A DNA stretch of 64,000 nt, from NCBI GenBank assembly GCA_964057225.1, contig OZ059900.1, positions 26,536,001 to 26,600,000 of the forward strand, written 5' to 3'. Of this stretch, positions 1-48,260 are shown piece after piece. Origin of the DNA: Auanema rhodensis. Taxonomy: Eukaryota; Animalia; Nematoda. Numbering within the stretch: the first letter of the stretch is position 1; every line of letters begins with the position of its first letter. A model generated the notes under the pieces. It was not told where the DNA came from, did not search any database, and saw only the letters and a list, made by a program, of their open reading frames with translations. Position numbers and translations under genes: made by a program.

Positions 1-2372
1 CATGTAGTAAGAGAATATTCGGATCGCGGAAGTCTTTTAAATTTGCCCAGTAATCTATAGTATGATCAGTAATGTTCAAAATATGGACAGCTGACAGCAA
101 AAATTGATGATATCGAGCAATAACAGTCAGGTTCTGATATTCGTTGCTAACTGATTGATAGTGATACCAGTTATGAATATATCGTATGGTATTTCCGCCA
201 GACGTGACAGTATATCTAGCAAACGGTAGATCCAATATTTGAATAGGAGTTAACTTATATTCCATTTCTGAGCGAAATGACGCAATTAAGGATGAATTTG
301 TTGAACGTTTATAGCGTTGGCGTGAAGGATCCATTTGATTATCCAAATAACTTGTTAGATCCAGTAAAGAATATGCATGCGGATAATCAATAAACGAGAC
401 AAGAGTCTCAGTAGTGGATTCGAAAATTGGTGAAGAAAAACAAGATTGAGTTGTAGTAGATGCTGAGGTGTTGGCTAAGACAAGTGCTGTTTCTAGACTT
501 GATATTAGCAGTGTTTGATCTCCAAGTATTCCATACAGAGGTCCAATACGTGTGTATTGGCATGGTGCTCGGGGTGTGGGTGGTTTCCAAACTACTGAAC
601 CATCTCCAAATGTACAGCTTCCCATTTGAGCTTTACAGCCTTCGGCGTTGACAATTAAGTCAGATACAATAGTATTGTCCTTTAAATTTGTAATAACTCC
701 TCGCTCCATCACAAATTGAGTTAAGTTGGCGCATTGAGTAAAACTGAAGAAACGTTCCGGTTCATATACTGGCTTAGGAGCTTCATATGTAAGTGGATTA
801 GCGCTCAACAGTTTTTCATTTTTCCATTTCTTGTCTCGAGCAGCTATACGGCATTCTTCTACAGATACATATCCATTACCAATGATGGTGTCGTTGCTTT
901 CTCGGAACCAAAATTGATCCGTTACACATAATCGATAGATGCGTGTATAACACTTCCACGCTTCCCATGTTACGACGGTTTGTTTAGGAATGAACAATTC
1001 AACGTTAACTTGATGAGCTTGTTGAATTGCTTTCCGTTGGCATCCTGTTATCTCTGGTGGTGTCATCAGAATTCCTCCTTTATAAGCTAAACATAGTTGA
1101 TATGAAGCATTCACAGTGGGAAGCAGAAATGTGCAGATTATTGTTGTGAGCAGGAATGGTAATGCAATAGTATTTATATTGAATCGAGGTTTCCATCGTC
1201 TTTGATTGCCTTGATTCTCTCTTGGATAATTGTCGCGATTATTCCTGGCAAAGTTGTCTCGATTTTCTCTTTGATAATTGTTGCGAGGTTCTCTCGAATG
1301 GTGATTACTCTCCATTGAGTAGTTGTTTCCATAATTTTGTCGAGGGCCAGAGTTCCTGCTGAATTTATTTTTGAAATTCTTCCAAGGGTTTCTTGAATTG
1401 TTGCCATTGTTCCGTTCGAAATCTCGTGGCTGCTGATGGTTCCTTTGGTTCCTATTTTCCTTCATGGTGATCTTCTGAACTGCAGAGATCAACTCTTGCA
1501 TAGTTGAGTTTTCTTCATGCTGTTTTTTTATAGTTAGCACGAATTGCTTCTTCAAAACGTGCTGTCCTTTTTGCTTCCTCATAAGTCTTCGGATCTTTTC
1601 CTTGAACAATTATGCCTAAATCAGCGTTCAATCCATTTAAGAAAGCTGATCTTAATATGAGCTCTCTTTCTCGATCAGTTGGGCTCATAATACTGGAAGC
1701 CATTTCTTCCAAGTATGAGGCAAACTGAGTAACAGTTTTCTCTCCTTGCGTCGAGCGTAGCAACTTCGCGATCGTGAAATTCCTTTCCGTGGCAGGGCAA
1801 AGTAACTCTGCCAATTGTGAAACAAGGTCTTTCCAAGGTCCTCGTTCACGAATTTCGGAAGGAATCGAGTTATATGCAGAGATCGCAGAATCATTCTGCT
1901 GAAGCAGCAGAGGAAGAAGAAAAATTCTTTCAATTACCGAAAGTCCCGCAGCATTCGCGAATCGGTTAAATATATCGATGTACGATCGAAAGCTTCGGCT
2001 ACCATCGTATTTGGGGCAGTGTGGACTGCCTAGAACTTTTGTTAAGTTTTTGGTCAACTCTGGAGATGCCATTAAATTAGGCGTTTCCAGAGTTGAATCT
2101 CTGTTTGATTGCTCATGTGGTCTCATGTTGAGTAGGAGCTTCAGAGGTAGTTTTTCGCGCTGGGGAGTTTTTTCTTTTTTCGGTGTTACAGCCAAGTGTG
2201 TTGGCGTTTTTTCGTCGTCCGATGGACTTAAATCGTTGTCAAACGAGTCGTCACTATCGGGAAAAGGAAATCGAGAAATACGATTTCTCTTGTCTCTTAA
2301 TCTTTGAGAGGTACGGAAAGGCGTATCCGTATAATTATTCTTGGAGGTTGCCGTTTTGGAAAAGGAGGAAAG
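1..2372 (-). pseudogene. gag and env N-terminal region of copy 1, broken by a +1 homopolymer indel
   Basis: ORF 1515..2195 matches the Gag of the 2485-aa ORF but ends NYKKTA*. It has T7 at 1523-1529 versus T6 in copy 2. The frame is open upstream to 2372. The indel could be a sequencing error. Confidence 0.75.
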
Positions 2373-3187
2373 TCAGAACAATCTACAATGTAAAATAGTG
2401 GAATAAGTTAGTAAACAAGATAAGAATATGAATAGTTAATAGTGAATAAATTAGTGAATAACGTGAAAAAAAAAATCGAAGAAAAAAAAAGATATATAAT
2501 AATATGGGTTGAAGATTAATTAATTAATGAACTCATACAAAAACAAACTATAGAGAGGAAAAAAAAAAGATGTGAATATAATTAATTGTTAAGATGATGA
2601 TAGGATATGATTATGTGACAATGTGATTCATAAATTAGAGAAGTGAGTATGGCGGACAAATCAAAATCTCAATTGTTACTGAATAACAATGAATTACCAA
2701 ACGAGGCATCTTTCAAATTCCAAAGTCTTTGTTTCAACTTGAATCAACAATCAAAAAATTATGAGAGGAAGGTTTAAATTCAAATATGACAAATGATACA
2801 GCGGATGTTATTTTCTTACAGTGGCCATTCTGTTAGTACAAACTTGTAATCTTTATCAAAAATATCGCAAATTGACTTTATTAAGGTCCAATTTTGCTTA
2901 TATCAAACAGCTTTTCCATTTCCAAAAAATATATATTTTTCGCCACAATGAAAAATCAAAAGTACAACTGCGCAGAAACAAAAAGAAATCGAAAAGTTGG
3001 CCAATTCAGTATCTCACCCTTGCGCAAAATATCAACCCTGTTTATTAAAAAAAATGAGTGAGACCCTTCGTACTGAATTGGAAAGAGAGGTGGTAGCCCA
3101 GGGAAATAGCTCAAAAAAATAAATTCTCTTTAACTGAATGATAATTCATAATTTAATCGAGTTCGAAAAATCGTAAAAAGATTCTAA

Positions 3188-3200
3188 GGTGGAACCTCCA
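3188..3200 (-). promoter_or_regulatory. Primer-binding site, tRNA-Gln
   Basis: TGGAGGTTCCACC lies directly inside the LTR and is complementary to the eukaryotic tRNA-Gln 3' end (...GGTGGAACCT-CCA). Confidence 0.85.
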
Positions 3201-3601
3201 TGTAATATCCTTATTTTGGATATTAATATTCCATGTTATTGACCCTTAGATTGATGTGTTGTAAAAGAAACAATAAGATTTGAGGAAGAGAGAAAGATTT
3301 ATTATAAATAAAAAACATTTAAACAATAAACAAATAAAGATAAAGATAAGTCCGCCAACTGAAGATTCAGTTGAATGGCAAGCTTATATAGCGAATGTTA
3401 TCAGCATTTTCCACGAAAGGTTATAAGTTGTCAATGACAATTATAACTATCTCAGAAAATGCTGAGGCTGCAAAATATAACTGATAACATAATACACTAA
3501 GACAAGAAACTAGAATTATAAAATATAAAATATAAAACACAGAATAAAGAAATACATAAAAATTATAGAAAGAATAAAGTAAAGAATTATAAAGTATAAC
3601 A
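3201..3601 (-). repeat. 5' LTR of copy 1 (401 bp)
   Basis: TGT...ACA termini. Differs from the LTRs at 37252 and 46233 by a few substitutions and a 2-bp indel. Confidence 0.95.
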
Positions 3602-34088: not shown

Positions 34089-34093
34089 AACGT

Positions 34094-34945: not shown

Positions 34946-35024
34946 GACAAACCACCACTTGATACGTGTACACTATTGCAAATGAAATCATTTGCATTTT
35001 AGGTACATTTACGAGTGGTTGATT

Positions 35025-35663
35025 ATGGTTTTCAGCTTCAAACTACCCAGTCAGACAACTGTGATAGGTGCTACCCAATGCGGTAAAACAACCCTCATAA
35101 AGCACATATGTGAAAATACTGAAAAGTTTTTCAACGTCCCCATTGATAGAATATTCTGGTTCAGTCAATGTGGGTCATCGTCAGGTGTACCAATAAATGA
35201 TGAGCGTTTAATAATTATTCAAGGGCCTCCTGATCCTGATTTGATAAAAGAACAAAAGGGAGTAAATACTATACTAGTGCTGGATGATTTGATGAACTTT
35301 TTTTCATCGAATAAAGCAGCAAAGGAATTACTCAACAACATTTTTACAGTATGGGCTCATGACTGGAATTTGGCAGTGTTTAATCTTGTGCAAGCGGCAT
35401 TTCAACTGGACAGGACCAGTCGAATCAATAGTACATATATAATACTGATGAAAAGTCATTCAGATATATTACAAATACGTAATTGTCTGCAGCAATTATT
35501 TGGGCCACGTTTCAAAAATGCTCTAGAGGCGTATGATGATGCAATCTCTACTCCCTATAGTCATTTACTGATTGACAATCATCCTTTAACGAGTGAGAAG
35601 CAGCGTATACTATCTGATATAACAGCGGAGAACCCTATTGTTTATGTTGCCAAAAATGTGTAA
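35025..35663 (+). CDS. A32/FtsK-like genome packaging ATPase
   Basis: Walker A GATQCGKT, Walker B ILVLDD, then LVQ, SRINSTY and PYSHLLID motifs. ATG at 35025. Confidence 0.92.
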   Translation: MVFSFKLPSQTTVIGATQCGKTTLIKHICENTEKFFNVPIDRIFWFSQCGSSSGVPINDERLIIIQGPPDPDLIKEQKGVNTILVLDDLMNFFSSNKAAKELLNNIFTVWAHDWNLAVFNLVQAAFQLDRTSRINSTYIILMKSHSDILQIRNCLQQLFGPRFKNALEAYDDAISTPYSHLLIDNHPLTSEKQRILSDITAENPIVYVAKNV

Positions 35664-35774
35664 AACGAAAAAAACGCAAGAGCTGGAAAAAAAAATGTTA
35701 CGGCTGAGAATATAAAAATGCCACATAACAAAACAAGAATAAAACGCCAATTGTACTATTTGTGCTTGTTGTAG

Positions 35775-36455
35775 TCAAAATGAAGGATCAAAGCGGATAA
35801 ACATGTTCAGGTTGAGTGCTTCAGGAATTAGTTTAAAGTAGAATACATTCTGCTTATAACCAAAAGTCTTTACAGTAGCCTCATCTGCATATATAACAAT
35901 ATAGCCCATATTGTTCAACAATTGCTTGCACGTCATGGTGTTATAAGAGCGCATCTAAAAAATTATAAAATTGAAAATAAATAAATATGCAAGCTTACAT
36001 TAATAGAAAAGTTTTCGGGCTTATAGTGACGAAACTCCTTCAAAAGACCCAACGCATCATTCCTTCCTCTACACTTTATACAGAGGCTGAAACAGTGATA
36101 CTCGTCTATAACCTGCAATGATTCCCTACAAGTTTTGCAGAGACAAATTGGTCTCATTAATACACTCCTTGGTGGAGTGCTCTCTCTCAGAATCTCCATC
36201 TGCTTTATTGGTGAATCTAAATTAAAGATTTAAAAAAAACAAGTTAAGGTTCATACCAAAACTTGTGAAATTTGGTGCTGGTGTGGGTGGTCGTAGTACT
36301 TCAGGTTCCGCACAACAAGTACAGCACGCTTCATTTCCGCTAAAGATCCAACTTTCTAAAATATAAGGCAAACTTGCAGAGAGGAGCAGTCTATGGCGAT
36401 TGGCAAAGAGTGGCAGAAGATGGTGAAACGTCGGATCCTCGGATAGTTGGCAGAG
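35775..36455 (-). CDS. Spliced Cys-rich protein of unknown function (at least 3 exons: 36455-36257, 36216-35999, 35954-35775; 5' end unresolved)
   Basis: GT-AG introns of 40 and 44 nt with matching phases join three open frames. TTTCAG acceptor at 36456. Motifs CCTCC, CLCKTC and HC..LC..C. Confidence 0.7.
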
Positions 36456-37251
36456 CTGAAATGTAAATGTAGTAAAATTGCCAACCTTTTATACAAAGAT
36501 TTTTGTAAAGTACAACCCATTGTGTTACAATCAAGTTTGCTGATGAAATTCTTTTATTAATTAGATTTTACAGCATATTTATGCAGATATACTCATCTCA
36601 TCGACAGTTGCCAGCAGTTGGCGCACTCTGAACCTGTAAACAATCTGCATATTAATTAGTTTTTACATCTCTTTAAACATTATTGTTTACCGTTTGTGCC
36701 ATAAACAACAGCCATCTCTGTAAAACATTTACGCTTTTTAAACTTTGCTTAATAGCTCATATATTAATCATAGTATACTTTTAAACCCATATTGTACCAC
36801 AAAACATATGACTGCCAACGTTTTATATGTAAAAAATATTTCATTCTTGAATATTTACTAATGATTATATTACGAAACTAAAACTTTTGAAATGTTAAAA
36901 TGATTATACTATATTTAAACCCCTACAGTGCAGTTATTAGTGTTTATTAACCCTCGATATGCGTGGCGTTGAGGTCAGCGCAACTGTTTGTTAATCTTGT
37001 TGTATTTACCTTCAATGTGTGCTCTATTTAGTTATTGTATTGTTATATTAGTAAAATAAAGTTTAAAACTAGTCTTTTCTTTTAATTTGAAACTTTTACT
37101 TGTTAGAATAAATATAATTAATAACAATTTGTAATTTCAAAAATTAATAATTTAATGTCGTTCTTATCGAATTAACTTTCGATATGTGTTCCATTAAATT
37201 TTGGTATTTCATATCGTTCTTATCGAATTAACTTTCGATATGTGTTCCATT

Positions 37252-37650
37252 TGTAATATCCTTAAGTTGGATATTAATATTCCATGATTGACCCTTAGAT
37301 TGATGTGTTGTAAAAGAAACAATAAGATTTGAGGAAGAGAGAAAGATTTATTATAAATAAAAAACATTTAAACAATAAACAAATAAAGATAAAGATAAGT
37401 CCGCCAACTGAAGATTCAGTTGAATGGCAAGCTTATATAGCGAATGTTATCAGCATTTTCCACGAAAGGTTATAAGTTGTCAATGACAATTATAACTATC
37501 TCGGAAAATGCTGAAGCTGCAAAATATAACTGATAACATAATACACTAAGACAAGAAACTAGAATTATAAAATATAAAATATAAAACACAGAATAAAGAA
37601 ATACATAAAAATTATAGAAAGAATAAAGTACATAATTATAAAGTATAACA
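37252..37650 (-). repeat. 3' LTR of copy 2
   Basis: TGT...ACA termini. On the minus strand TATATAA (~37433-37439) precedes AATAAA (~37347-37352). Confidence 0.97.
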
Positions 37651-37707
37651 TGCTACCGCTCTTGAAGTCCTGTGTCCTCACAGGTATGCATAAGGTTTCC
37701 AAAATTT

Positions 37708-40700
37708 TCATAATGTTGCAGCAAGCTTTTTGATGAGATCCTTATGTACTTTTCTCATCTTTCCTTGACTCATTTCCAATTCCACATATGAGTTGTATAC
37801 GCCTGTAATTTTGAACGGTCCATTATAAGTGGGTCGCAATTTGCCGTGAACCGTCATATCCTTCAATAGTACCATTTCACCTATTTCAAATATACGTGAT
37901 GCTATTCGGTTACTATTATTCAGCCGATTTTGTTGTTCAATTGATTTTAATTGAATTTTTTCTTGAATAGAATCCCAGGTATTTTTCCGGTTCTCATTTC
38001 TTTCCAATAATTCGTCATCTTCAGGAGAATTTAGATGAGGTTGTCCTGGTAATTGACGGTCCATAGGTAGGCGTGCGTCTCTTCCAAATAAAGCAATGTA
38101 TGGGCTGATTCCGGTAGTTGTACTTGGGATTGTATTTAACGCGAATGTGATTTTAGGTAATTGTGAGGCCCATTGAGAGACACGGTTTTCAGCACAAGTG
38201 GATAAACATTCCTGGATGGTTCGATGTAGTCGTTCCACTTGACCGTTTGTATTTTTGTGATATGGCAGAGAGAAGGTTTGTACAATTCCAAATTCGTTGC
38301 ACATTAACTTGAATTCTTTAGATATAAAATTTCCTCCATTGTCAGACACGATGCTCACTGGTGGTCCAAAAATGAAGACGAAATTCGTCAGGAACTTTCG
38401 GACTGTTTCTTCGGCATTCTGTGTGCGTAAAGGTATGCTCGTTATCCATTTCGAAAAAGCATCTTGAATAGAAAGAATATATTTAAATCCATTAGTGCTA
38501 GGGGAAAAAGGTCCTGTCACATCCATATGAATCCTATCAAATGGTTTTTGTGGGGTAACAAACTTTCCATATGGTTCTCTCGTTGTATCATGTTGATTTA
38601 TTTTCCTTTTTGCGCATGTCAGGCATTGGCTGACGATCTCTTTCGCATCTTCCATCATATTTGTCCAATGGAATCTTCTTGATAATGCTGCATGTGTTCT
38701 TTTGATTCCTTGATGCGCTCCAATTCTTGCGTCTTCATGAAAAAGTTTCGCAAGTACTTGATTCAATGTCTTTTGTTTTGGAATCATAATCCTTGGAGAA
38801 AGATATTGTTTGTTAGGTCGAGCATGTAAAACTCCGTCGATAACAATATATCTATCGCTATTAATCTGTTTAGGTTGTTCCGTTAACATATCAGCAATAG
38901 TTTCCTTAATCCATGGTGTTCCTTGTTGTAACTGAATTAGTTTGTCGGTATCCAGAGTTTCCACATTGGTTACATTTATGAGATAGTTGATGGTTTCTTG
39001 GATATCCGTTAAACTTGTTGTTGGCGTTGTCTTCTGTAGCTTCGGTTTAGGACCATCGTTAGCTTCGTTGCCTATGTATCTGGATAGTGCATCACATACA
39101 CTATTCATACGTCCTGGACGGTACATAATCACAATATCATATTCCTGGATCATTAACTGATATTTCGCTAGTCTTCCAATAAGATCTCTTCTACTCATTA
39201 GACTGGTTAGTGGTCGATGATCCGTTATTAGCTTAGTTGACGTGCCTAAAACATATGTGCGAAATTGTTGTAATGCGTAGACGAGTGCCAAAGCTTCTAA
39301 TTCGATAGGTGGGTATTTTCTTTCTGTAGGTGAGAGCTTCCTACTTGCGAACGCAACAGGGTGTAATCCATTTCCTGTATCTTGTAGTAAGACTGCTCCA
39401 ATTGCAATAGTACTAGCGTCACTTTCAATAACAAAAGGTGCTCCATTTGTTGGTGGCTTCAGAACTGGTGCTGTGCATAGAGCTTTCTTGAGAGTCTCGA
39501 ATGCTTTTTCACGTTCTTCCGTCCATTCGAAATCTTGATCCTTGTGTGTGAGTTGATACAACGGTTCGGCTATTTTGGCGTAGTCTCTGATGAATCGCCG
39601 AAAATAATTTGTCATTCCAAGGAATGAACGAATAGCGGTGACCGTTTTAGGAGTTGGAAATTTCATAACGGCTGTAATTTTTGATGGATCAGGTTGTATT
39701 CCATCACGACCAATTATAAATCCAAGAAATTTAACTTGTGTAGCTGCAAATTTGCATTTACTTAGTTTTGCTTTCATTCCTAATCCTTGTAAAGCTTGTA
39801 ACACTTCTTCTATATCCTCCAGATGTTGTTCAGCTGTGTTTGATATAATGAGTAGATCATCCAGATAAACAAAAAGTCGACATTTTACTTGATTTTGCAA
39901 ATAGCGAACAGCTGATTGAAATGTATGTGGAGCTCCACAGAGACCCATCGGCATTCTGCAATATTGATAAACTCCTGATGAGGTCACAAATGCAGTGAGG
40001 TGACGGTCTTCTTCACGTAAAGGAATTTGAAAAAATCCCGATACGAGATCGATGTTTGTGAAGTATCGAGCTCCTGCAGTGCTGTCGATTATTTCTGGTA
40101 TATGCGGAATAGAATAAGTCTGTTTCTGTGTGACACTATTGAGTGCACGGAAGTCCGTTACAAAGCGGAATGAGTTGTCTTTCTTCTTGACTAAGACGAC
40201 TGGACTTGTAAAACTTGATGTTGATGTTTCTATTACTCCTTGGTCTAGCATTTCTTTTACTTGACGTTCAACTTCATCCTGTTTACCCAAAGGAACTCGA
40301 TATGATCGAGATTTGGGCAGGTCCATATCGGTTCTCAAAGTGATTGAATGTTCTATTGGTCCTTTGAATAATCCAATGTTCCGATCTTCGTTAAAAAAAG
40401 CATTTTTGAATCTTCTCAACATAGTTTTGAGATTTTGACGTTGATTTTTAGATAGATCCGTTGATTCGAATTTTAAGTTATCGAAAGGATTCTTCTCAAA
40501 AATAGGCAATTTATCTGACCAATCAGCTTCTGGTGGAATATAGTCCGGTATATGTGGGATTCCAATTTCTTCTGCTATTTTTCCTTTTCCAATAATGGTG
40601 TTTCCTGTTAACTTCACCTCATAATTTGCTGTATTGATGGCGAATATTGTGAGTGGTGAAGTCTTGATAGCAGTAGGTGTGAATTGAATAGGTCCATTTC

Positions 40701-43700
40701 CACATCGTATAAGAGCGTATTGTTTTGGTTGTAGTTCTTTTGCCAATTGTAGACGAATCATAGCTTTAGTTCGGGGTGGAATAATAGATTCTCTAATGTT
40801 TATAATTGAAACGGTGTCTGAACTGATGCGAAAGCTCTTCTGGTTAGCGGATAATAATGGTAGAAAATGGTTTCCAACTATTAATTGCTTGCGTAGAGCT
40901 TGTAGAGAAGTTGTTATTCCTTTTTCTTCTAATGCTTTCATGATGTCCAAACCAAGTAACATTTCAGTAGGACAATGTTTATCCTCAGAGATTAAAAATG
41001 TGTGTGAAAGATGGTATCCAGCAATAACAATGTCCAACATTATTGTACCCAGAAAGTTGAATATTGATCCATTTGCTGCGGTGGCAGAGATTTTAGTTGA
41101 GTTGAAATTCTCTTTTCCTAAATAGCGTACTGATGATTCCTTCAAATATGAAACAGATGCTCCGCTATCCCATAAAGCTACGAGTCCTCTGCCTTCTGCT
41201 TCGATTCTTATATATGGGAGTTCTCTTTTGTTTGTTGCACAGCATCCAACAAAAGGTATAATAATAGGAATAAAAGTGATGACAGTAGGAAAATATCTTC
41301 GAATAGTTTCGTCGTCGGCTGGAACATCGATGTCAGCGTTGAGTAGTTCGTGTTGTTCAACTGCATTCACATTTAAGATAGGAACTTTCTCTTTGATATA
41401 AGATACAACAATAATGTATAATGCTGATCCAAAGATTAATATAACTATCATAACACCTGCAGAGATAAACATTCTGTTGAGGGATCCAGCAAAGAAATCA
41501 ACTCCTCGTTCCCATAGTGATGATGCAATATTTTGAGTAGAACTAAAAAGTTCGTTACTTTTTGTAAACCATTCTGATAAGCCTGGCAAATTCGCTTGAT
41601 TCGTGATAACTCGTAGAAAATTTCTATGAGGATTGGTAGCGAAAATGTGTCCATATGTTAAGCTTATTGTTCTAACTAAGTTTTCATCGGTGATATTTTC
41701 ATAAAGATTTCTTTGTGAAAATCGAATGGCTGCTAGATCGGGATACTGATCTGAACCAATGTTTAAAGCAGTTACGTTTGTAACTCCGTTGAGGGATTTC
41801 CATTCTCCATCCTCTTTCCATATATCATTTTCTACTGTTTCACATGGAATTTCAGTTCCATATGCTTCCAAATCTGCTGAATCTTGAGGTGCAAAGTAGA
41901 GGCGGTCATCATCCGTGATGACGGGTGTTTCTAAATAACACTTATCTTTGTATGTGTGGTTGCGATAAATGTGAATTGGTTCTATTGGCTGACAGGTTGA
42001 AACCCGAATAAGATTCCGTCCAATTATTCGAGCCACTACATCATCTCGTTGCATAATAGATCGGATAGCAATCGTAGGATTGATATTAAATATAGCTTGC
42101 CATGTCTTAATAAGTTCAAGTTGAGCATGACATATGCTGTGATGTTGATGATGAAATTCTTCGACCAGTATGGTTCTCATTCGTTCAAATCCATAGTTGA
42201 GTTTGTTGATGGTAGTTAATGCATCTCGATGTCGAAGTATAGTATTCTGGTGATCAGTTAAGTGAGTGCCGAATAATTCTTGAGCTTTCTCTATGCTTCC
42301 AATCATGGGTTGCATTGATGTCATCCCTTGAATAGTACTAATTGTTTGTTTTGTAGTAGATGATGTATTTACAACAGGTTTTGAGGTAGCACTAAGAAAT
42401 CGTGCAGTTGGCGTAGTTTTAGTGGTGATAGAGCGACTGAATACTCTTTTTGTAATCTCTTCAGGTGCTGGTTTTGAAAACCATGACATTAAATCAGTTA
42501 ATTGTTTAGCGTCAATATTGATGTTACGGCTGTAGAGATCTTCTTTATTCGAAGGCATCGGTATTCCAAAATTGGTTTCTCGGTTTCTGAGTGTCCAGTT
42601 ATCCAACAGCTTTAATTTCATTTCATATACTTGATCTTTCACTTGTCGTTGCATAAAATGACTATGAAAGAACAGTTTCATTCGATAATATTCTATCAGT
42701 TGAGGTTGAGAATACTGATAGCGTAGTTCACGAAGTAATTCTTTTGCTTTATATACCACAGAACGTGGATCTCCAAATGTGAAGTTGAGATGGTTTTGAT
42801 ATACTGTGAATATCAAAAATTCGAGTGGTGGCACATATTCTGTTTCGGATAAGATTGCAGGTATTTGTATCAATTCCCATAATTTATCTCTTGCAACCGA
42901 AATTGTAGAATTGCCTGGTTTAACTATTCTTTTTATATAATTGATAGGAAGTCGGTGTGCTAGTTGACCGATGACAAAACTAGGCTCCATTTGTTCGATC
43001 CACATTTTTGTAATCATCTTGCTTTCTTCTCCTCCTAGAGCATGTAGTAAGAGAATATTCGGATCGCGGAAGTCTTTTAAATTTGCCCAGTAATCTATAG
43101 TATGATCAGTAATGTTCAAAATATGGACAGCTGACAGCAAAAATTGATGATATCGAGCAATAACAGTCAGGTTCTGATATTCGTTGCTAACTGATTGATA
43201 GTGATACCAGTTATGAATATATCGTATGGTATTTCCGCCAGACGTGACAGTATATCTAGCAAACGGTAGATCCAATATTTGAATAGGAGTTAACTTATAT
43301 TCCATTTCTGAGCGAAATGACGCAATTAAGGATGAATTTGTTGAACGTTTATAGCGTTGGCGTGAAGGATCCATTTGATTATCCAAATAACTTGTTAGAT
43401 CCAGTAGAGAATATGCATGCGGATAATCAATAAACGAGACAAGAGTCTCAGTAGTGGATTCAAAAATTGGTGAAGAAAAACAAGATTGAGTTGTAGTAGA
43501 TGCTGAGGTGTTGGCTAAGACAAGTGCTGTTTCTAGACTTGATATTAGCAGTGTTTGATCTCCAAGTATTCCATACAGAGGTCCAATACGTGTGTATTGG
43601 CATGGTGCTCGGGGTGTGGGTGGTTTCCAAACTACTGAACCATCTCCAAATGTACAGCTTCCCATTTGAGCTTTACAGCCTTCGGCGTTGACAATTAAGT

Positions 43701-45165
43701 CAGATACAATAGTATTGTCCTTTAAATTTGTAATAACTCCTCGCTCCATCACAAATTGAGTTAAGTTGGCGCATTGAGTAAAACTGAAGAAACGTTCCGG
43801 TTCATATACTGGCTTAGGAGCTTCATATGTAAGTGGATTAGCGCTCAACAGTTTTTCATTTTTCCATTTCTTGTCTCGAGCAGCTATACGGCATTCTTCT
43901 ACAGATACATATCCATTACCAATGATGGTGTCATTGCTTTCTCGGAACCAAAATTGATCCGTTACACATAATCGATAGATGCGTGTATAACATTTCCACG
44001 CTTCCCATGTTACGACGGTTTGTTTAGGAATGAACAATTCAACGTTAACTTGATGAGCTTGTTGAATTGCTTTCCGTTGGCATCCTGTTATCTCTGGTGG
44101 TGTCATCAGAATTCCTCCTTTATGAGCTAAACATAGTTGATATGAAGCATTCACAGTGGGAAGCAGAAATGTGCAGATTATTGTTGTGAGCAGGAATGGT
44201 AATGCAATAGTATTTATATTGAATCGAGGTTTCCATCGTCGTTGATTGCCTTGATTCTCTCTTGGATAATTGTCGCGATTATTCCTGGCAAAGTTGTCTC
44301 GATTTTCTCTTTGATAATTGTTGCGAGGTTCTCTCGAATGGTGATTACTCTCCATTGAGTAGTTGTTTCCATAATTTTGTCGAGGGCCAGAGTTCCTGCT
44401 GAATTTATTTTTGAAATTCTTCCAAGGGTTTCTTGAATTGTTGCCATTGTTCCGTTCGAAATCTCGTGGCTGCTGATGGTTCCTTTGGTTCCTATTTTCC
44501 TTCATGGTGATCTTCTGAACTGCAGAGATCAACTCTTGCATAGTTGAGTTTTCTTCATGCTGTTTTTTATAGTTAGCACGAATTGCTTCTTCAAAACGTG
44601 CTGTCCTTTTTGCTTCCTCATAAGTCTTCGGATCTTTTCCTTGAACAATTATGCCTAAATCAGCGTTCAATCCATTTAAGAAAGCTGATCTTAATATGAG
44701 CTCTCTTTCTCGATCAGTTGGGCTCATAATACTGGAAGCCATTTCTTCCAAGTATGAGGCAAACTGAGTAACAGTTTTCTCTCCTTGCGTCGAGCGTAGC
44801 AACTTCGCGATCGTGAAATTCCTTTCCGTGGCAGGGCAAAGTAACTCTGCCAATTGTGAAACAAGGTCTTTCCAAGGTCCTCGTTCACGAATTTCGGAAG
44901 GAATCGAGTTATATGCAGAGATCGCAGAATCATTCTGCTGAAGCAGCAGAGGAAGAAGAAAAATTCTTTCAATTACAGAAAGTCCCGCAGCATTCGCGAA
45001 TCGGTTAAATATATCGATGTACGATTGAAAGCTTCGGCTACCATCGTATTTGGGGCAGTGTGGACTGTCTAGAACTTTTGTTAAGTTTTTGGTCAACTCT
45101 GGAGATGCCATTAAATTAGGCGTTTCCAGAGTTGAATCTCTGTTTGATTGCTCATGTGGTCTCAC
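37708..45165 (-). CDS. Gag-Env-Pol polyprotein: capsid, class III fusion glycoprotein, aspartic protease, RT, RNase H, integrase
   Basis: Gag motifs PKYDGS and AFLNGL; signal peptide 44211-44146; furin site RYKR; TM 41472-41395; protease LWDSGAS (41161-41169); RT YLDD (39856-39867); RNase H SDAS/ELE/TDH; integrase HHCC, D-D-E and GPF. The codon at 45165 is GTG in this copy, and the first ATG is at 45111. Confidence 0.95.
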   Translation of the reverse strand: MRPHEQSNRDSTLETPNLMASPELTKNLTKVLDSPHCPKYDGSRSFQSYIDIFNRFANAAGLSVIERIFLLPLLLQQNDSAISAYNSIPSEIRERGPWKDLVSQLAELLCPATERNFTIAKLLRSTQGEKTVTQFASYLEEMASSIMSPTDRERELILRSAFLNGLNADLGIIVQGKDPKTYEEAKRTARFEEAIRANYKKQHEENSTMQELISAVQKITMKENRNQRNHQQPRDFERNNGNNSRNPWKNFKNKFSRNSGPRQNYGNNYSMESNHHSREPRNNYQRENRDNFARNNRDNYPRENQGNQRRWKPRFNINTIALPFLLTTIICTFLLPTVNASYQLCLAHKGGILMTPPEITGCQRKAIQQAHQVNVELFIPKQTVVTWEAWKCYTRIYRLCVTDQFWFRESNDTIIGNGYVSVEECRIAARDKKWKNEKLLSANPLTYEAPKPVYEPERFFSFTQCANLTQFVMERGVITNLKDNTIVSDLIVNAEGCKAQMGSCTFGDGSVVWKPPTPRAPCQYTRIGPLYGILGDQTLLISSLETALVLANTSASTTTQSCFSSPIFESTTETLVSFIDYPHAYSLLDLTSYLDNQMDPSRQRYKRSTNSSLIASFRSEMEYKLTPIQILDLPFARYTVTSGGNTIRYIHNWYHYQSVSNEYQNLTVIARYHQFLLSAVHILNITDHTIDYWANLKDFRDPNILLLHALGGEESKMITKMWIEQMEPSFVIGQLAHRLPINYIKRIVKPGNSTISVARDKLWELIQIPAILSETEYVPPLEFLIFTVYQNHLNFTFGDPRSVVYKAKELLRELRYQYSQPQLIEYYRMKLFFHSHFMQRQVKDQVYEMKLKLLDNWTLRNRETNFGIPMPSNKEDLYSRNINIDAKQLTDLMSWFSKPAPEEITKRVFSRSITTKTTPTARFLSATSKPVVNTSSTTKQTISTIQGMTSMQPMIGSIEKAQELFGTHLTDHQNTILRHRDALTTINKLNYGFERMRTILVEEFHHQHHSICHAQLELIKTWQAIFNINPTIAIRSIMQRDDVVARIIGRNLIRVSTCQPIEPIHIYRNHTYKDKCYLETPVITDDDRLYFAPQDSADLEAYGTEIPCETVENDIWKEDGEWKSLNGVTNVTALNIGSDQYPDLAAIRFSQRNLYENITDENLVRTISLTYGHIFATNPHRNFLRVITNQANLPGLSEWFTKSNELFSSTQNIASSLWERGVDFFAGSLNRMFISAGVMIVILIFGSALYIIVVSYIKEKVPILNVNAVEQHELLNADIDVPADDETIRRYFPTVITFIPIIIPFVGCCATNKRELPYIRIEAEGRGLVALWDSGASVSYLKESSVRYLGKENFNSTKISATAANGSIFNFLGTIMLDIVIAGYHLSHTFLISEDKHCPTEMLLGLDIMKALEEKGITTSLQALRKQLIVGNHFLPLLSANQKSFRISSDTVSIINIRESIIPPRTKAMIRLQLAKELQPKQYALIRCGNGPIQFTPTAIKTSPLTIFAINTANYEVKLTGNTIIGKGKIAEEIGIPHIPDYIPPEADWSDKLPIFEKNPFDNLKFESTDLSKNQRQNLKTMLRRFKNAFFNEDRNIGLFKGPIEHSITLRTDMDLPKSRSYRVPLGKQDEVERQVKEMLDQGVIETSTSSFTSPVVLVKKKDNSFRFVTDFRALNSVTQKQTYSIPHIPEIIDSTAGARYFTNIDLVSGFFQIPLREEDRHLTAFVTSSGVYQYCRMPMGLCGAPHTFQSAVRYLQNQVKCRLFVYLDDLLIISNTAEQHLEDIEEVLQALQGLGMKAKLSKCKFAATQVKFLGFIIGRDGIQPDPSKITAVMKFPTPKTVTAIRSFLGMTNYFRRFIRDYAKIAEPLYQLTHKDQDFEWTEEREKAFETLKKALCTAPVLKPPTNGAPFVIESDASTIAIGAVLLQDTGNGLHPVAFASRKLSPTERKYPPIELEALALVYALQQFRTYVLGTSTKLITDHRPLTSLMSRRDLIGRLAKYQLMIQEYDIVIMYRPGRMNSVCDALSRYIGNEANDGPKPKLQKTTPTTSLTDIQETINYLINVTNVETLDTDKLIQLQQGTPWIKETIADMLTEQPKQINSDRYIVIDGVLHARPNKQYLSPRIMIPKQKTLNQVLAKLFHEDARIGAHQGIKRTHAALSRRFHWTNMMEDAKEIVSQCLTCAKRKINQHDTTREPYGKFVTPQKPFDRIHMDVTGPFSPSTNGFKYILSIQDAFSKWITSIPLRTQNAEETVRKFLTNFVFIFGPPVSIVSDNGGNFISKEFKLMCNEFGIVQTFSLPYHKNTNGQVERLHRTIQECLSTCAENRVSQWASQLPKITFALNTIPSTTTGISPYIALFGRDARLPMDRQLPGQPHLNSPEDDELLERNENRKNTWDSIQEKIQLKSIEQQNRLNNSNRIASRIFEIGEMVLLKDMTVHGKLRPTYNGPFKITGVYNSYVELEMSQGKMRKVHKDLIKKLAATL
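41395..44211 (-). other. Env domain within the polyprotein: class III (herpes gB / chuvirus G-like) fusogen, about 940 aa
   Basis: Signal peptide, Cys-rich ectodomain, N-glycosylation sequons, furin site, the pattern C..INPT.AIR....DVVARIIG....VSTC...CY..TPV...GTEIPC resembling gB domains III/IV, and a C-terminal TM. Confidence 0.8.
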
Positions 45166-46219
45166 GTTGAGTAGGAGCTTCAGAGGTAGTTTTTCGCGCT
45201 GGGGAATTTTTTTCTTTTTTCGCTGTTACAGCCAAGTGTGTTGGCGTTTTTTCGTCGTCCGATGGACTTAAATCGTTGTCAAACGAGTCGTCACTATCGG
45301 GAAAAGGAAATCGAGAAATACGATTTCTCTTGTCTCTTAATCTTTGAGAGGTACGGAAAGGCGTATCCGTATAATTATTCTTGGAGGTTGCCGTTTTGGA
45401 AAAGGAGGAAAGTCAGAACAATCTACAATGTAAAATAGTGGAATAAGTTAGTAAACAAGATAAGAATATGAATAGTTAATAGTGAATAAATTAGTGAATA
45501 ACGTGAAAAAAAAATCGAAGAAAAAAAAGATATATAATAATATGGGTTGAAGATTAATTAATTAATGAACTCATACAAAAACAAACTATTGAGAGGAAAA
45601 AAAAAGTGAATATAATTAATTGTTAAGATGATGATAGGATATGATTATGTGACAATGTGATTCATAAATTAGAGAAGTGAGTATGGCGGACAAATCAAAA
45701 TCTCAATTGTTACTGAATAACAATGAATTACCAAACAAGGCATCTTTCAAATTCCAAAGTCTTTGTTTCAACTTGAATCAACAATCAAAAAATTATGAGA
45801 GGAAGGTTTAAATTCAAATATGACAAATGATACAGCGGATGTTATTTTCTTACAGTGGCCATTCTGTTAGTACAAACTTGTAATCTTTATCAAAAATATC
45901 GCAAATTGACTTTATTAAGGTCCAATTTTGCTTATATCAAACAGCTTTTCCATTTCCAAAAAAATATATTTTTCGCCACAATGAAAAATCAAAAGTACAA
46001 CTGCGCAGAAACAAAAAGAAATCGAAAAGTTGGCCAATTCAGTATCTCACCCTTGCGCAAAATATCAACCCTGTTTATTAAAAAAATGAGTGAGACCCTT
46101 CGTACTGAATTGGAAAGAGAGGTGGTAGCCCAGGGAAATAGCTCAAAAAAATAAATTCTCTTTAACTGAATGATAATTCATAATTTAATCGAGTTCGAAA
46201 AATCGTAAAAAGATTCTAA

Positions 46220-46232
46220 GGTGGAACCTCCA
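46220..46232 (-). promoter_or_regulatory. Primer-binding site, tRNA-Gln
   Basis: TGGAGGTTCCACC abutting the 5' LTR. Confidence 0.85.
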
Positions 46233-46631
46233 TGTAATATCCTTAAGTTGGATATTAATATTCCATGATTGACCCTTAGATTGATGTGTTGTAAAAGAAA
46301 CAATAAGATTTGAGGAAGAGAGAAAGATTTATTATAAATAAAAAACATTTAAACAATAAACAAATAAAGATAAAGATAAGTCCGCCAACTGAAGATTCAG
46401 TTGAATGGCAAGCTTATATAGCGAATGTTATCAGCATTTTCCACGAAAGGTTATAAGTTGTCAATGACAATTATAACTATCTCGGAAAATGCTGAAGCTG
46501 CAAAATATAACTGATAACATAATACACTAAGACAAGAAACTAGAATTATAAAATATAAAATATAAAACACAGAATAAAGAAATACATAAAAATTATAGAA
46601 AGAATAAAGTACATAATTATAAAGTATAACA
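46233..46631 (-). repeat. 5' LTR of copy 2
   Basis: No difference from 37252-37650 found by eye. Confidence 0.97.
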
Positions 46632-47358
46632 CATTAAATTTTGTATTTCATATCGTTCTTATCGAATTAACCTTCGATATGTGTTCCATTAAATTTTGGT
46701 ATTTCATATCGTTCTTATCGAATTAACTTTCGATATGTGTTCCATTGAATTACCCATAACAAGTACGGTGAATAAATTTATCTACATGCAAAAATTTTAT
46801 TGATCTTCAAAAATACAAATAAAATAGTACAAACACAATACAATAAAAAATAAACAAAATAAGTAAACAAACATTATTAATAAATATAATAAAGAAATAA
46901 ATAAAATTTAAAAACAAATTTATATATTTAAAATTTAAACATAATTTATATATATAAAATTTGAAGTTAATTTAAATATTTAAAGTTTAAATATAATTTA
47001 TATATATATAATTTAAATATAATTTAAATATTTAAAGTTTAAATATAATTTTAAATTAAGATTTTTATTTTTACTTAATATATTTAAAAATAATTAAAAA
47101 TATATACATACATTTGAAAAAGCATATTTAAATATGATTAAAAAAAAAATCATGCTTTAAATCATGACTTTTATATTTAAAAAAGGAAAATCCATGAACC
47201 ATGATCCCAAAATATGATTTTAACAGCTGACGCTCAAAAATATGTTTTTGACAGCTGACGCGCCCCAAAAGTATGTTTTTAGCAGCTGACGCCCCCAAAA
47301 GTATGTTTTTAGCAACTGTTTGGGGGCGTGGTTAGTAAATTTTGCACGGCTCTCTACT

Positions 47359-47537
47359 CACCTCCTACTGAATTTGGTAAAATGATTGCCAAAACATTTA
47401 ATCCTATTCGTTATGTACCAATCACTAGACAAACACTCGATACCATACGTATTGAAATTTTAGATGAATTTGGTCGTCCTATGCAATTTAATTATGGTTC
47501 TACAGTTGTTACATTGCATGTTAAAAATATGAAATAA
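47359..47537 (+). pseudogene. Minor capsid C-terminal fragment fused to the TIR end
   Basis: Reverse complement of 34094-34272 (PPTEFGK...KNM). Further copies at 51864-52042, 52705-52850 and 33286-33431. Confidence 0.9.
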
Positions 47538-47542
47538 ACGTT

Positions 47543-48007
47543 TTATTCAACAGTTATACAATACCACATTTTTATTTTCGAAGGTTTAAAAGATAGTTTA
47601 GGACAGTTTTGTTTGTCGCTCGGCTCGTGTTGTGAATGTTCTCCGTCACTATTGCTGCGGCATCTTTTTGATTGGGTTGAATGTACAAACTCCTCAGCTT
47701 TTTCAAAGGGTTTGCTGGTATCATTTCCATCACCATCTTCACCATTCGTTCCATTATTATTATGAATACGCCGAATATGACGCTCACAACTGAATCTTGT
47801 TCCAAAAGTTTCACTACAATGAGGGCACAAACGTCTACGAACACCATCCAAATGTCCATATTTTTGAATAAAGTCAGCATTGCTGATATAATTGTTACAT
47901 ACGGGTTGAATCCCTGCATGCCTTTTCAAAACGTGATCACTAAAATGCTTGGTTGAAGAAAATATTTCCTTGCATGTACCACAATATTTGTTACATAAAA
48001 GTTCCAT
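47543..48007 (-). CDS. C2H2 zinc-finger protein, copy 2 (native upstream context)
   Basis: Same protein as 33624-34088. ATG at 48007. Confidence 0.8.
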   Translation of the reverse strand: MELLCNKYCGTCKEIFSSTKHFSDHVLKRHAGIQPVCNNYISNADFIQKYGHLDGVRRRLCPHCSETFGTRFSCERHIRRIHNNNGTNGEDGDGNDTSKPFEKAEEFVHSTQSKRCRSNSDGEHSQHEPSDKQNCPKLSFKPSKIKMWYCITVE

Positions 48008-48048
48008 TAGAGGAAAATGAAAAACGACAACACGCAATCAACCCACTT

Positions 48049-48219
48049 TTATATAATGAGCAATAATATGACTAGTGTTGTACAAAAGCCCAATCCCAAT
48101 GCTATACCTTTAATAAATGGCACTGAAATACATTTCAACATTCTCCTGTATAAAGGCGCTGGTTTAGATTGCTCCAACGTGTATTTGACACATAATTCAC
48201 AGTGACAAGGAATATTCAT
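48049..48219 (-). CDS. Small putative tail-anchored membrane protein (56 aa)
   Basis: MNIPCHCELC... with hydrophobic C-terminus GIALGLGFCTTLVILLLII. Fills the gap between protease and ZnF in the same orientation. Confidence 0.5.
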   Translation of the reverse strand: MNIPCHCELCVKYTLEQSKPAPLYRRMLKCISVPFIKGIALGLGFCTTLVILLLII

Positions 48220-48260
48220 AACTGACCACGTAATGTAGCAGGTTATTAATGACAAATTTC

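What the first reader, a model, noticed from the sequence alone, without database searches (positions are those of the whole stretch)
37708..45165. Ty3/Gypsy endogenous virus with a class III fusogen embedded in frame between Gag and Pol (single Gag-Env-Pol ORF)
Seen: one uninterrupted ORF in which ~940 aa lie between a Gag domain and the DSG protease. This stretch has a signal peptide (TIALPFLLTTIICTFLLPTVNA), conserved-looking cysteines, glycosylation sequons, a furin site (RQRYKR, 43345-43362) and a TM anchor. Known: env genes of retroviruses, errantiviruses and nematode Cer/Tas-type elements normally lie 3' of pol, and gB-like envs occur in some invertebrate LTR elements. Inferred: the INPT..AR.IG..V..C..CY..PV..IPC pattern makes this a herpes gB/chuvirus G-like class III fusogen, and the gag-env-pol single-polyprotein order defines an unusual enveloped Metaviridae lineage. 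I cannot verify that it is undescribed.
Basis: partly seen in the sequence, partly recalled or inferred. Interest (0 to 1): 0.93.

Follow-up and report, generated by a model that had tools for sequence, protein, structure and literature searches.

The report
Nematode retroelement with internal envelope gene
This is an intact, recently inserted retrovirus-like mobile element whose viral membrane-fusion (envelope) gene sits between its capsid and polymerase genes in one reading frame; the arrangement is real, but it has already been published for nematode genomes, so this copy is a new member of a known kind.

Summary
Window 37708-45165 (minus strand) is one uninterrupted 2485-codon ORF inside a 9380-bp LTR element (37252-46631). 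The element has 399-bp LTRs that are 100% identical, TG..CA ends and a 4-bp target duplication.

The ORF reads:
- Gag, with a capsid fold
- an internal signal-like segment
- an ~890-aa ectodomain
- a TM anchor
- PR-RT-RNaseH-IN

The ectodomain is a class III fusogen. It matches Pfam Monjiviricetes_fusion above the curated cutoff. Foldseek top hits are herpesvirus gB (PDB) and nyami-, chu- and rhabdo-like virus glycoproteins (BFVD).

The architecture is not a one-off. All of the closest Pol relatives (44-55% identity; Caenorhabditis, Diploscapter, Auanema) carry the same env domain between gag and pol. In three checked loci gag, env and pol form one contiguous ORF, and in a fourth, partial locus env and pol do. 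A second 99.1%-identical copy lies at window 1-3601.

The GAG-ENV-POL order with a gB-type env in nematode Ty3/gypsy elements is already published (Sacco et al. 2022; Chary & Hayashi 2023/2026). Two residual points are new here. Translation as one membrane-threaded polyprotein is not discussed in the literature I could read. A 348-aa lineage-specific insert follows a furin-like site whose position is shared with many relatives.

The parts
37252..46631 (-). Whole LTR element, copy 1 (9380 bp), intact
   Evidence: Bounded by identical LTRs and a 4-bp target-site duplication. The one ORF fills 7458 bp of it.
46233..46631 (-). 5' LTR (399 bp), TG..CA ends
   Evidence: 100% identical to 37252-37650. 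The sequence was read.
37252..37650 (-). 3' LTR (399 bp)
   Evidence: Only 57 nt separate the ORF stop from this LTR, so there is no room for an env gene 3' of pol.
46632..46635 (-). Target-site duplication AATG, 5' side. Its partner is at 37248-37251.
   Evidence: Read directly. Joining the two flanks gives one unit of the host 55-bp tandem repeat.
46220..46232 (-). Primer-binding-site-like sequence starting TGG, directly after the 5' LTR
   Evidence: Read. The primer tRNA is not identified; there is no tRNA gene in the window.
45166..46219 (-). Long untranslated leader (about 1.05 kb) without a substantial sense ORF
37708..45165 (-). Single Gag-Env-Pol ORF, 2485 codons (first ATG at 45111)
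44212..45111 (-). Gag (aa 19-318): helical two-lobed capsid domain (aa 19 to about 228), then an R/N-rich low-complexity tail with no CCHC knuckle
   Evidence: PF03732 at E 3.4e-6, 27.6 bits against a cutoff of 24.1. The AF2 model has pLDDT above 90 over residues 1-200. All top 50 Foldseek PDB hits are retroviral or dArc1 capsids, with weak E-values (7e-3 and above) but probability near 1.
44146..44211 (-). Internal signal-like hydrophobic segment (aa 319-340) ending V-N-A
   Evidence: Hydropathy peak of 2.14. In the 43-sequence table (window included), 30 of the 36 sequences that extend upstream of Env, the window among them, have a hydrophobic segment at the same place.
43366..44145 (-). Env ectodomain, N-terminal beta-rich part (aa 341-600; corresponds to class III domains I/II)
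   Evidence: AF2 pLDDT is mostly 80-97. Four nearly invariant cysteines lie here.
43345..43362 (-). Furin-like site RQRYKR (aa 602-607)
   Evidence: The position is shared with many relatives.
42301..43344 (-). Lineage-specific insert (aa 608-955): mainly helical, then an S/T-rich stretch
   Evidence: Low pLDDT and no Pfam hit. It is detectably similar only to the Auanema relative P0001. The linker length across the family ranges from none to about 465 aa.
41473..42300 (-). Env ectodomain, C-terminal part (aa 956-1231): long central helix, beta 'crown' domain and membrane-proximal region
   Evidence: PF24664 matches aa 969-1126 and PF00606 (weak) matches aa 986-1066. AF2 pLDDT is 78-97 for aa 958-1130.
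41395..41472 (-). Env transmembrane anchor (aa 1232-1257)
   Evidence: Hydropathy of 2.75. All 43 sequences in the table (window included) have an equivalent segment.
41236..41292 (-). Second, proline-rich hydrophobic segment (aa 1292-1310) in the Env tail just before PR
   Evidence: An equivalent segment just before PR is present in the eight Caenorhabditis relatives of the closest clade listed. Its role is unexplained.
40933..41217 (-). Aspartic protease (DSG)
   Evidence: PF13975 at 28.7 bits against a cutoff of 28.2.
39712..40191 (-). Reverse transcriptase (YLDD)
   Evidence: PF00078 at E 9e-35.
39139..39525 (-). RNase H
   Evidence: PF17919 and PF17917 at E 1e-33 to 1e-35.
38257..38769 (-). 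Integrase (H2C2 zinc domain plus catalytic core)
   Evidence: PF17921 and PF00665.
1..3601 (-). Copy 2 of the same element: 5' LTR (3201-3601), leader, gag and the first part of env. It is cut off by the window edge. Its gag is broken by one frameshift. There are no in-frame stops in the env codons checked.
   Evidence: 99.1% nucleotide identity to 43041-46631, with 21 mismatches and 8 indel events. It abuts the 168-bp satellite.

Best explanation
What it is. This is a young, apparently intact copy of a nematode Ty3/gypsy (Metaviridae-type) endogenous retrovirus. It belongs to the already described lineage with gene order gag-env-pol. Its env is a class III membrane-fusion glycoprotein, closest to glycoproteins of negative-strand RNA viruses (Monjiviricetes) and more distantly to herpesvirus gB.

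Likely mechanism (inferred). The full-length unspliced RNA is translated as one polyprotein that is threaded through the ER membrane, in the manner of a flavivirus polyprotein.
1. Gag is made in the cytosol.
2. The internal hydrophobic segment (aa 319-340) acts as a signal, translocates the Env ectodomain into the lumen and is probably cut after V-N-A by signal peptidase.
3. The TM segment (aa 1232-1257) stops transfer, so the Env tail and PR-RT-RH-IN stay cytosolic. The element's own protease frees them.
4. A furin-type protease cuts Env at RQRYKR, in the domain II/III linker where many herpesvirus gBs are cleaved.
5. This scheme puts Gag, Env and Pol at the same membrane in equal amounts.

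What is shown. The anatomy, the folds, the conservation of the anatomy in relatives, and recent transposition are shown. The processing steps, the topology and any fusion activity are inferred.
For: Identity.
- LTRs, TSD and the PBS-like site.
- pol domains in Ty3/gypsy order.
- Capsid fold in Gag.
- Class III fold: PF24664 above its cutoff, herpesvirus gB as all top 50 PDB hits, and RNA-virus glycoproteins as the best BFVD hits.

Family membership.
- 244 clusters of Env relatives at E <= 1e-3.
- Of the 150 best, 26 also carry PR/RT downstream of Env and 17 carry Gag upstream, including 5 with both.
- The closest Pol relatives all carry the env domain.
- In an NJ Pol tree the window sits in an all-Env+ clade of 9 tips with 100% bootstrap. 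That clade lies inside a 19-tip clade that is 18/19 Env+.
- The literature states the GAG-ENV-POL order with gB-type env for nematodes.

Single-polyprotein translation.
- Gene length equals 3 x protein length + 3 in C. auriculariae (L001), a Logan contig (L002) and C. nigoni (L004). The partial Auanema locus is contiguous from Env into Pol.
- The internal signal-like segment and the TM anchor are conserved at matching positions across relatives.
- There is no Met between aa 272 and the start of Env, and none between the TM and PR.
- There are no strong splice-donor or acceptor consensus matches on the sense strand, against 4.3 and 1.4 expected.

Recent activity and constraint.
- LTRs show 0 differences in 399 bp.
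- A second copy is 99.1% identical.
- The two copies differ in env by 4 synonymous and 1 non-synonymous change.
Against: - No expression, processing or particle data exist for this element. The host is not identified and the ORF's product is not on record.
- A second hydrophobic segment (aa 1292-1310) lies between the TM and PR. If it spanned the membrane, Pol would end up on the wrong side. It has three prolines and is conserved only in the closest clade, so I read it as membrane-associated rather than spanning. That reading is untested.
- About a third of the Env model (the insert) has pLDDT below 50. Overall TM-scores to gB are low (0.17-0.28), because only the two confident parts superpose.
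- PF00606 (gB) is below its curated cutoff, and a sequence search of the PDB found nothing.
- The splice-site scan used only strong consensus patterns, so weaker sites are not excluded.
- The synonymous/non-synonymous count rests on five changes.
Confidence: 0.75

Rival explanations
1. Same element, but expression is retrovirus-like. Separate spliced or trans-spliced mRNAs make Env, and a Gag-Pol message has env removed. On this view the continuous frame is incidental.
For: Nematode retroelements do use splicing: Cer1 makes CERV from a spliced mRNA (PMC10309623). The C. remanei gene model for the relative P0161 has predicted introns, because its gene span exceeds 3 x protein length. No transcript data were available here.
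Against: - Gag, env and pol stay in one frame in three relatives checked at the DNA level, and env and pol do in a fourth, partial one; Pol identity to the window across the family ranges from about 25 to 55%. That is not expected if env were removed or translated separately.
- There is no Met near the start of Env or of PR.
- There are no strong donor or acceptor consensus matches in 9380 nt, against 4.3 and 1.4 expected.
Confidence: 0.15
2. The env module no longer serves entry or exit. It is retained only for another role, such as membrane targeting of assembly or cell-to-cell movement within the germline. Alternatively it is a decaying passenger, and the element behaves as an ordinary intracellular retrotransposon.
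For: No evidence of infectivity exists for any member in the literature I could read. Chary & Hayashi state that infectivity of such elements remains unclear. The middle third of Env is a fast-evolving, poorly modelled insert.
Against: - The fusogen core keeps eight conserved cysteines.
- The AF2 core is confident.
- The internal signal and the TM are conserved, and the furin-like site keeps its position in many relatives.
- The reading frame is intact across a Pol clade that is almost entirely Env+.
- Changes between the two copies are mostly synonymous.
Together these argue for continuing selection on a membrane glycoprotein, although not for any particular use of it.
Confidence: 0.1
3. The fusion is an artefact: an assembly chimera, or a one-off capture of a host or viral gene into a single gypsy copy.
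For: None found.
Against: - Identical LTRs with a clean 4-bp TSD restore the host 55-bp repeat.
- An independent second copy in the same window has the same gag-env junction.
- The same architecture occurs in many species.
Confidence: 0.01

Closest known systems
Nematode GAG-ENV-POL Ty3/gypsy elements with HSV/gB-type ENV (Chary & Hayashi, eLife 2026, PMC13524379; 'non-canonical nematode endogenous retroviruses', Sacco et al. 2022, J Gen Virol 103:1739)
   Same: Gene order, Ty3/gypsy pol, class III env flanked by a signal or TM segment and a TM, LTRs and multicopy status. The closest Pol relatives are Caenorhabditis, Diploscapter and Auanema elements with the same domains.
   Different: This copy is only 44-55% (Pol) and about 30% (Env) identical to anything in the protein collections, so it is a new family-level member. 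The text I could read does not discuss the single continuous ORF or how it would be translated. I could not read Sacco et al..
Glycoproteins of Monjiviricetes (nyami-, chu- and rhabdo-like viruses; Pfam PF24664)
   Same: These are the best sequence-profile match and the best predicted-structure matches. This fits the 'RNA virus glycoprotein capture' in the title of Sacco et al.
   Different: Those are stand-alone genes of RNA viruses of about 500-950 aa. Here the protein is embedded in a retroelement polyprotein and carries a 348-aa insert after the furin-like site.
Herpesvirus glycoprotein B
   Same: Class III fold: all 50 top PDB matches have probability 1.0. The furin-type site sits in the linker before the central helix, as in many gBs (established knowledge).
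   Different: PF00606 is below its curated cutoff, a sequence search of the PDB found nothing, and identity is about 10% in structural alignments. It is a distant homologue or analogue, not a gB family member.
BEL/Pao elements with a chuvirus-like glycoprotein (Dezordi et al. 2020, bioRxiv 10.1101/2020.02.15.950899, as cited in PMC13524379)
   Same: They carry a homologous env module. Relatives P0037, P0074 and P0083 are BEL/Pao polyproteins with PF24664.
   Different: They are a different retroelement family (Peptidase_A17, DUF1759). Env is at the C-terminal end, in the order gag-pol-env.
Maverick fusogen MFUS-1 of nematodes (Widen et al., bioRxiv 10.1101/2022.07.12.499685)
   Same: It is a gB-like class III fusogen captured by a mobile element in nematodes, with a signal peptide and a single TM.
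   Different: It is carried by a DNA transposon as a separate gene. Sequence relationship to this Env was not tested.
Drosophila gypsy-type errantiviruses
   Same: Ty3/gypsy backbone plus an acquired viral fusogen.
   Different: Their env is F-type (class I) and lies 3' of pol, expressed from a spliced mRNA. Here env is class III, lies 5' of pol and is in frame.
Flavivirus-type membrane-threaded polyprotein (works-like comparison only)
   Same: A cytosolic capsid protein is followed by an internal signal, lumenal glycoprotein(s), TM anchor(s) and cytosolic enzymes in one ORF (established knowledge).
   Different: There is no homology. The topology here is inferred from hydropathy only.

Membership tests
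Ty3/gypsy (Metaviridae) LTR retroelement | Flanking LTRs with TG..CA ends and a short target-site duplication | tested here: met
   399-bp LTRs at 100% identity and a 4-bp TSD, AATG.
Ty3/gypsy (Metaviridae) LTR retroelement | pol order PR-RT-RNaseH-IN, with integrase after RT | tested here: met
   Pfam domains lie in this order along the ORF.
Ty3/gypsy (Metaviridae) LTR retroelement | Gag with a retroviral-type capsid fold | tested here: met
   PF03732 is above its cutoff. The AF2 model matches MLV, HIV and HTLV CA and dArc1 (E-values are weak).
Ty3/gypsy (Metaviridae) LTR retroelement | tRNA primer-binding site next to the 5' LTR | tested here: inconclusive
   A 13-nt TGG-initiated sequence abuts the LTR. 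No tRNA was available to match it.
Nematode GAG-ENV-POL gB-type elements (Sacco 2022; Chary & Hayashi 2026) | env located between gag and pol | tested here: met
Nematode GAG-ENV-POL gB-type elements (Sacco 2022; Chary & Hayashi 2026) | env of the HSV/gB (class III) type | tested here: met
Nematode GAG-ENV-POL gB-type elements (Sacco 2022; Chary & Hayashi 2026) | Pol groups with other nematode Env-carrying elements | tested here: met
   An NJ tree puts the window in a 9-tip all-Env+ clade (bootstrap 100%) with Caenorhabditis and Diploscapter elements. The published reference sequences themselves were not available.
Nematode GAG-ENV-POL gB-type elements (Sacco 2022; Chary & Hayashi 2026) | Nematode host | tested here: inconclusive
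A nematode host is inferred from the nearest relatives.
Class III viral fusion glycoproteins | Characteristic multi-domain fold: beta-rich fusion and PH-like domains, a long central helix and a crown domain | tested here: met
   The AF2 model has confident parts at aa 341-600 and 958-1130. Foldseek probability is 1.0 to gB and to RNA-virus glycoproteins.
Class III viral fusion glycoproteins | Type I membrane topology: signal, ectodomain, single TM | tested here: met
   Hydropathy analysis. Here the signal is internal to a polyprotein.
Class III viral fusion glycoproteins | Bipartite internal fusion loops; trimer formation | not tested
   Model coordinates were not inspected and only a monomer was modelled.
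Class III viral fusion glycoproteins | Membrane-fusion activity | not testable with these tools
   This needs bench work.
Herpesvirus gB family (Pfam PF00606) | Score above the curated family cutoff | tested here: not met
   21.7 bits against a cutoff of 43. No hit in a sequence search of the PDB.
Monjiviricetes fusion glycoprotein family (Pfam PF24664) | Score above the curated family cutoff | tested here: met
   44.0 bits against a cutoff of 27, E 9.9e-12, but only profile positions 294-445 of 653 are matched.
Errantivirus sensu stricto (Drosophila gypsy type) | env 3' of pol, F-type fusogen | tested here: not met
   Only 57 nt lie between the pol stop and the 3' LTR. The env is class III.

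The most novel reading that the evidence does not exclude
The whole lineage may express Gag, a class III envelope glycoprotein and Pol as one membrane-threaded polyprotein. An internal signal sequence would lead into Env, and the Env TM anchor would double as the membrane tether of Pol. That would be a flavivirus-like expression strategy which, as far as I could read, has not been described for any reverse-transcribing element. In addition, the variable insert after the furin-like site (348 aa here) could be a lineage-specific host-interaction module.
Probability: 0.3. Interest if true: 0.6.

Novelty: new member of a known kind. Interest (0 to 1): 0.35.

Why it matters
The element is a clean, very young example of an enveloped-type retroelement in a nematode genome: its LTRs are identical, it has two copies within 64 kb, and it lies in satellite DNA.

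It backs the published claim that Ty3/gypsy lineages in nematodes carry a class III fusogen between gag and pol. It adds direct DNA-level evidence that gag, env and pol are one continuous frame in several species, which raises a concrete question about how such a polyprotein is made and sorted.

It does not define a new lineage.

Tried and rejected
Searches and look-ups that gave nothing:
- The word-indexed protein search with the Env region found nothing. The exhaustive HMMER search was needed.
- A sequence search of the PDB with the ectodomain gave no hit.
- A 71-sequence alignment that included long polyproteins failed in the tool. I used a 43-sequence set instead.
- The window's own product is not on record, so the host stays unidentified.
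- There is no tRNA in the window with which to name the primer.
- Sacco et al. 2022 is not held, and the eLife supplements are not held. I therefore could not check whether this element, its host, or the single-ORF reading was already listed.

Ideas considered and rejected:
- Cer1 of C. elegans as the same kind. Its extra ORF lies 3' of pol and encodes CERV, not a fusogen.
- An env gene 3' of pol. There is no room for one.
- Chimera or one-off capture.

Not done:
- I ran no further search on naming the host. The Pol search had already shown that no near-identical protein is in the collection.
- I did not model the insert separately, because only one relative shares it.
Full report
OBSERVATION.
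The ORF list shows one ORF at 37708..45165 on the minus strand, 2485 codons long. Its translation has no internal stop. The tool starts it at a GTG. The first ATG is codon 19 (45111).

A self-comparison of 33000-58000 found two 399-bp direct repeats, 37252-37650 and 46233-46631, that are 100% identical. Read on the minus strand, they begin TG and end CA. They are flanked by the same four bases (AATG) on each side. Joining the flanks restores one unit of a host 55-bp tandem repeat.

The element therefore spans 37252-46631 (9380 bp). Its layout on the minus strand is:
- 5' LTR
- a TGG-initiated primer-binding-like 13-mer directly after the LTR
- a ~1.05-kb leader without a sense ORF
- the single ORF
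- 57 nt
- 3' LTR

There is no room for an env gene after pol.

DOMAIN MAP.
Pfam on the whole ORF places aspartic protease, RT, two RNase H models, the integrase zinc domain and the integrase core in the Ty3/gypsy order in the C-terminal half.

Between Gag and PR it reports PF24664 Monjiviricetes_fusion. The match is E 9.9e-12 and 44 bits against a curated cutoff of 27, covering aa 969-1126. It also reports a sub-threshold PF00606 herpesvirus gB match (21.7 bits against a cutoff of 43).

Searched alone, the N-terminal 300 aa match PF03732 Retrotrans_gag above the cutoff.

Hydropathy gives three hydrophobic segments:
- aa 319-340, ending V-N-A, which fits a signal-peptidase site
- aa 1232-1257, strongly hydrophobic
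- aa 1292-1310, proline-rich, just before PR

STRUCTURE.
I modelled Env (aa 341-1260) with AlphaFold2 on a 43-sequence alignment of relatives. The model has three zones:
- a confident beta-rich N-terminal part (aa 341-600)
- a low-confidence, mostly helical stretch (aa 603-955)
- a confident ~70-residue helix followed by a beta domain (aa 958-1130), then the TM helix

Foldseek against the PDB returned herpesvirus gB for all 50 top matches, with best E 9e-11 and probability 1.0. Against predicted viral structures the best matches were glycoproteins of rhabdo-like, nyami-like and chu-like negative-strand RNA viruses (E 4.5e-17 to 1e-11), with herpesvirus gB interleaved. TM-scores are low because only the two confident parts superpose.

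A sequence search of the PDB found nothing.

The Gag model is confident over its first 200 residues and all-helical. Its top 50 PDB matches are all retroviral capsid proteins or Drosophila Arc1 capsid. Their E-values are weak but consistent.

RELATIVES.
An exhaustive HMMER search with the Env stretch found 244 clusters at E <= 1e-3. I mapped the window's own domains onto the best 150:
- 26 also carry PR and/or RT (and often RH and IN) downstream of Env in the same protein
- 17 carry Gag upstream, including 5 that have both
- one has RT upstream of Env

Three of the long proteins with Env at the C-terminal end and no Ty3/gypsy pol match, once checked, are BEL/Pao polyproteins in gag-pol-env order.

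Named sources are nematodes: Auanema sp. JU1783 (best Env match, 30%), Caenorhabditis remanei, C. brenneri, C. nigoni, Acrobeloides nanus and Aphelenchus avenae.

A search with the Pol region gave closest relatives at 44-55% identity. They come from Auanema, C. auriculariae, C. remanei, C. nigoni, C. brenneri, C. japonica and Diploscapter pachys. Every one has PF24664 and/or PF00606 precomputed in the same protein.

I built a neighbour-joining tree of 110 RT-to-IN regions (714 columns). It puts the window in a 9-tip clade with 100% bootstrap (60 replicates) that is entirely Env-positive. That clade sits inside a 19-tip clade (73%) in which 18 tips are Env-positive.

ONE ORF IN RELATIVES TOO.
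The gene span equals three times the protein length plus a stop in three loci:
- C. auriculariae (L001, 7611 bp for 2536 aa)
- a Logan contig (L002, 7461 bp for 2486 aa)
- C. nigoni (L004, 6771 bp for 2256 aa)

The partial Auanema locus is contiguous from Env into Pol. The C. remanei model has predicted introns. L001 also has 100%-identical ~209-bp flanking repeats 9.8 kb apart.

In the 43-sequence table (42 relatives plus the window, each with Env followed by PR or RT), a hydrophobic segment sits just upstream of the projected start of Env in 30 of the 36 sequences that extend that far. A strongly hydrophobic segment follows the Env C-terminal part in all 43. The second, weaker segment before PR is seen in the closest (Caenorhabditis) clade.

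An R-x-K/R-R motif lies in or near the linker in 44 of 104 relatives. Among the 25 longest-linker relatives listed, it falls within a few residues of the projected end of the N-terminal Env part in about a dozen. The linker between the two conserved Env parts varies from none to ~465 aa.

The window's 348-aa insert is detectably similar only to the Auanema protein and has no Pfam match.

SECOND COPY AND AGE.
Window 1-3601 (minus strand) is a second copy, cut off by the window edge. It is 99.1% identical to 43041-46631, with its 5' LTR at 3201-3601 abutting the 168-bp satellite.

Its gag is broken by one frameshift. The env codons visible in it have no stop.

Differences per kb are 15 in the LTR and 4-5 elsewhere. 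In 390 compared env codons there are 4 synonymous differences and 1 non-synonymous difference. These numbers are small, but they go in the direction of purifying selection.

Identical LTRs in copy 1 point to a very recent insertion.

HOW IT LIKELY WORKS (inference).
Four observations point the same way:
- the continuous frame is conserved across distant relatives
- an internal signal-like segment and a stop-transfer anchor are conserved
- there is no Met near the start of Env or of PR
- there is no strong splice consensus on the sense strand (0 donors and 0 acceptors found, against 4.3 and 1.4 expected)

I therefore favour translation of one polyprotein that is threaded through the ER membrane. 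Gag would be cytosolic, Env lumenal, and Pol cytosolic and tethered by the Env anchor until the element's protease releases it.

Furin-type cleavage would split Env in the linker before the central helix, as in many herpesvirus gBs (established knowledge).

The proline-rich second hydrophobic segment is unexplained. If it spanned the membrane, the topology would fail.

COMPARISON WITH THE LITERATURE.
Chary & Hayashi (PMC13524379; preprint 2023) state that Ty3/gypsy elements in Nematoda, Bryozoa and Platyhelminthes carry only HSV/gB-type ENV, arranged GAG-ENV-POL. They say the arrangement was first reported for nematodes by Sacco et al. [quoted passage not shown] I could not read that paper.

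The eLife text mentions ectodomains flanked by a signal peptide and a TM, or by two TMs, and a furin site that is not always conserved. It does not mention a fused ORF or a polyprotein.

Cer1 of C. elegans is a different case. Nematode Mavericks carry a separate gB-like fusogen, MFUS-1.

VERDICT.
The observation and the interpretation are correct, and the kind is already described. This is a new, intact, young member of it. Interest is modest.

1. The tblastn table printed by my script showed match bounds that bracket the frame change in copy 2's gag. I repeated those bounds once in my working notes to myself.
2. The splice-donor pattern used, and the generic furin and sequon patterns, are degenerate consensus motifs from general knowledge, not from a tool. 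The acceptor motif also appears in PMC10309623. The splice result should be treated as a lead.
3. Consensus lines printed by the alignment tool were not used.

Noticed in passing
window 3602-33200, 52851-54483, 57816-64000: Large arrays of a 168-bp satellite with 96-98% unit identity. About 37 kb of the 64-kb window is this one repeat. Every mobile element in the window sits in it or at its edges.
   Followed up: partly
window 33201-52850: Copy 1 is nested in a ~19.7-kb block bounded by ~1-kb inverted repeats (33230-34272 against 52906-51864, 99.4%). The block contains 55-bp and 26-bp tandem repeats and a 1.4-kb internal direct duplication (46632-48008 and 51158-52513). The only protein hints are weak: an adenovirus-type protease (Peptidase_C5) in ORF 48261-48803 and an ATPase in 34992-35663. 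It may be a decayed Maverick/Polinton-like or other TIR element.
   Followed up: partly
window 54484-57815: A second, unrelated retroelement fragment lies inside the satellite. Its ORF 54923-57688 (+, 921 aa) has protease and partial RT matches. The RT is 31% identical to the main element. An internal duplication (55069-55415 and 57274-57620) repeats part of the ORF.
   Followed up: partly
window 41236-41292 (aa 1292-1310 of the ORF): A second hydrophobic, proline-rich segment with a Cys-Cys pair lies between the Env anchor and the protease. An equivalent segment just before PR is present in the closest Caenorhabditis relatives. Its role in topology is unexplained.
   Followed up: partly
proteins P0037, P0074, P0083 (ENA contigs of ~8.4 kb): These are BEL/Pao-type polyproteins of 2577-2713 aa in which a homologous class III env module is fused in frame at the C-terminal end (gag-pol-env). 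In-frame fusion of this env to a retroelement polyprotein therefore occurs in two families and in two orders.
   Followed up: partly
L001:940-3000 (C. auriculariae relative): The relative has a ~1.85-kb stretch between its 5' repeat and the polyprotein ORF, in which two further genes are called (130 and 304 aa, no Pfam hit). The window's element has a ~1.05-kb leader with no such ORF.
   Followed up: no
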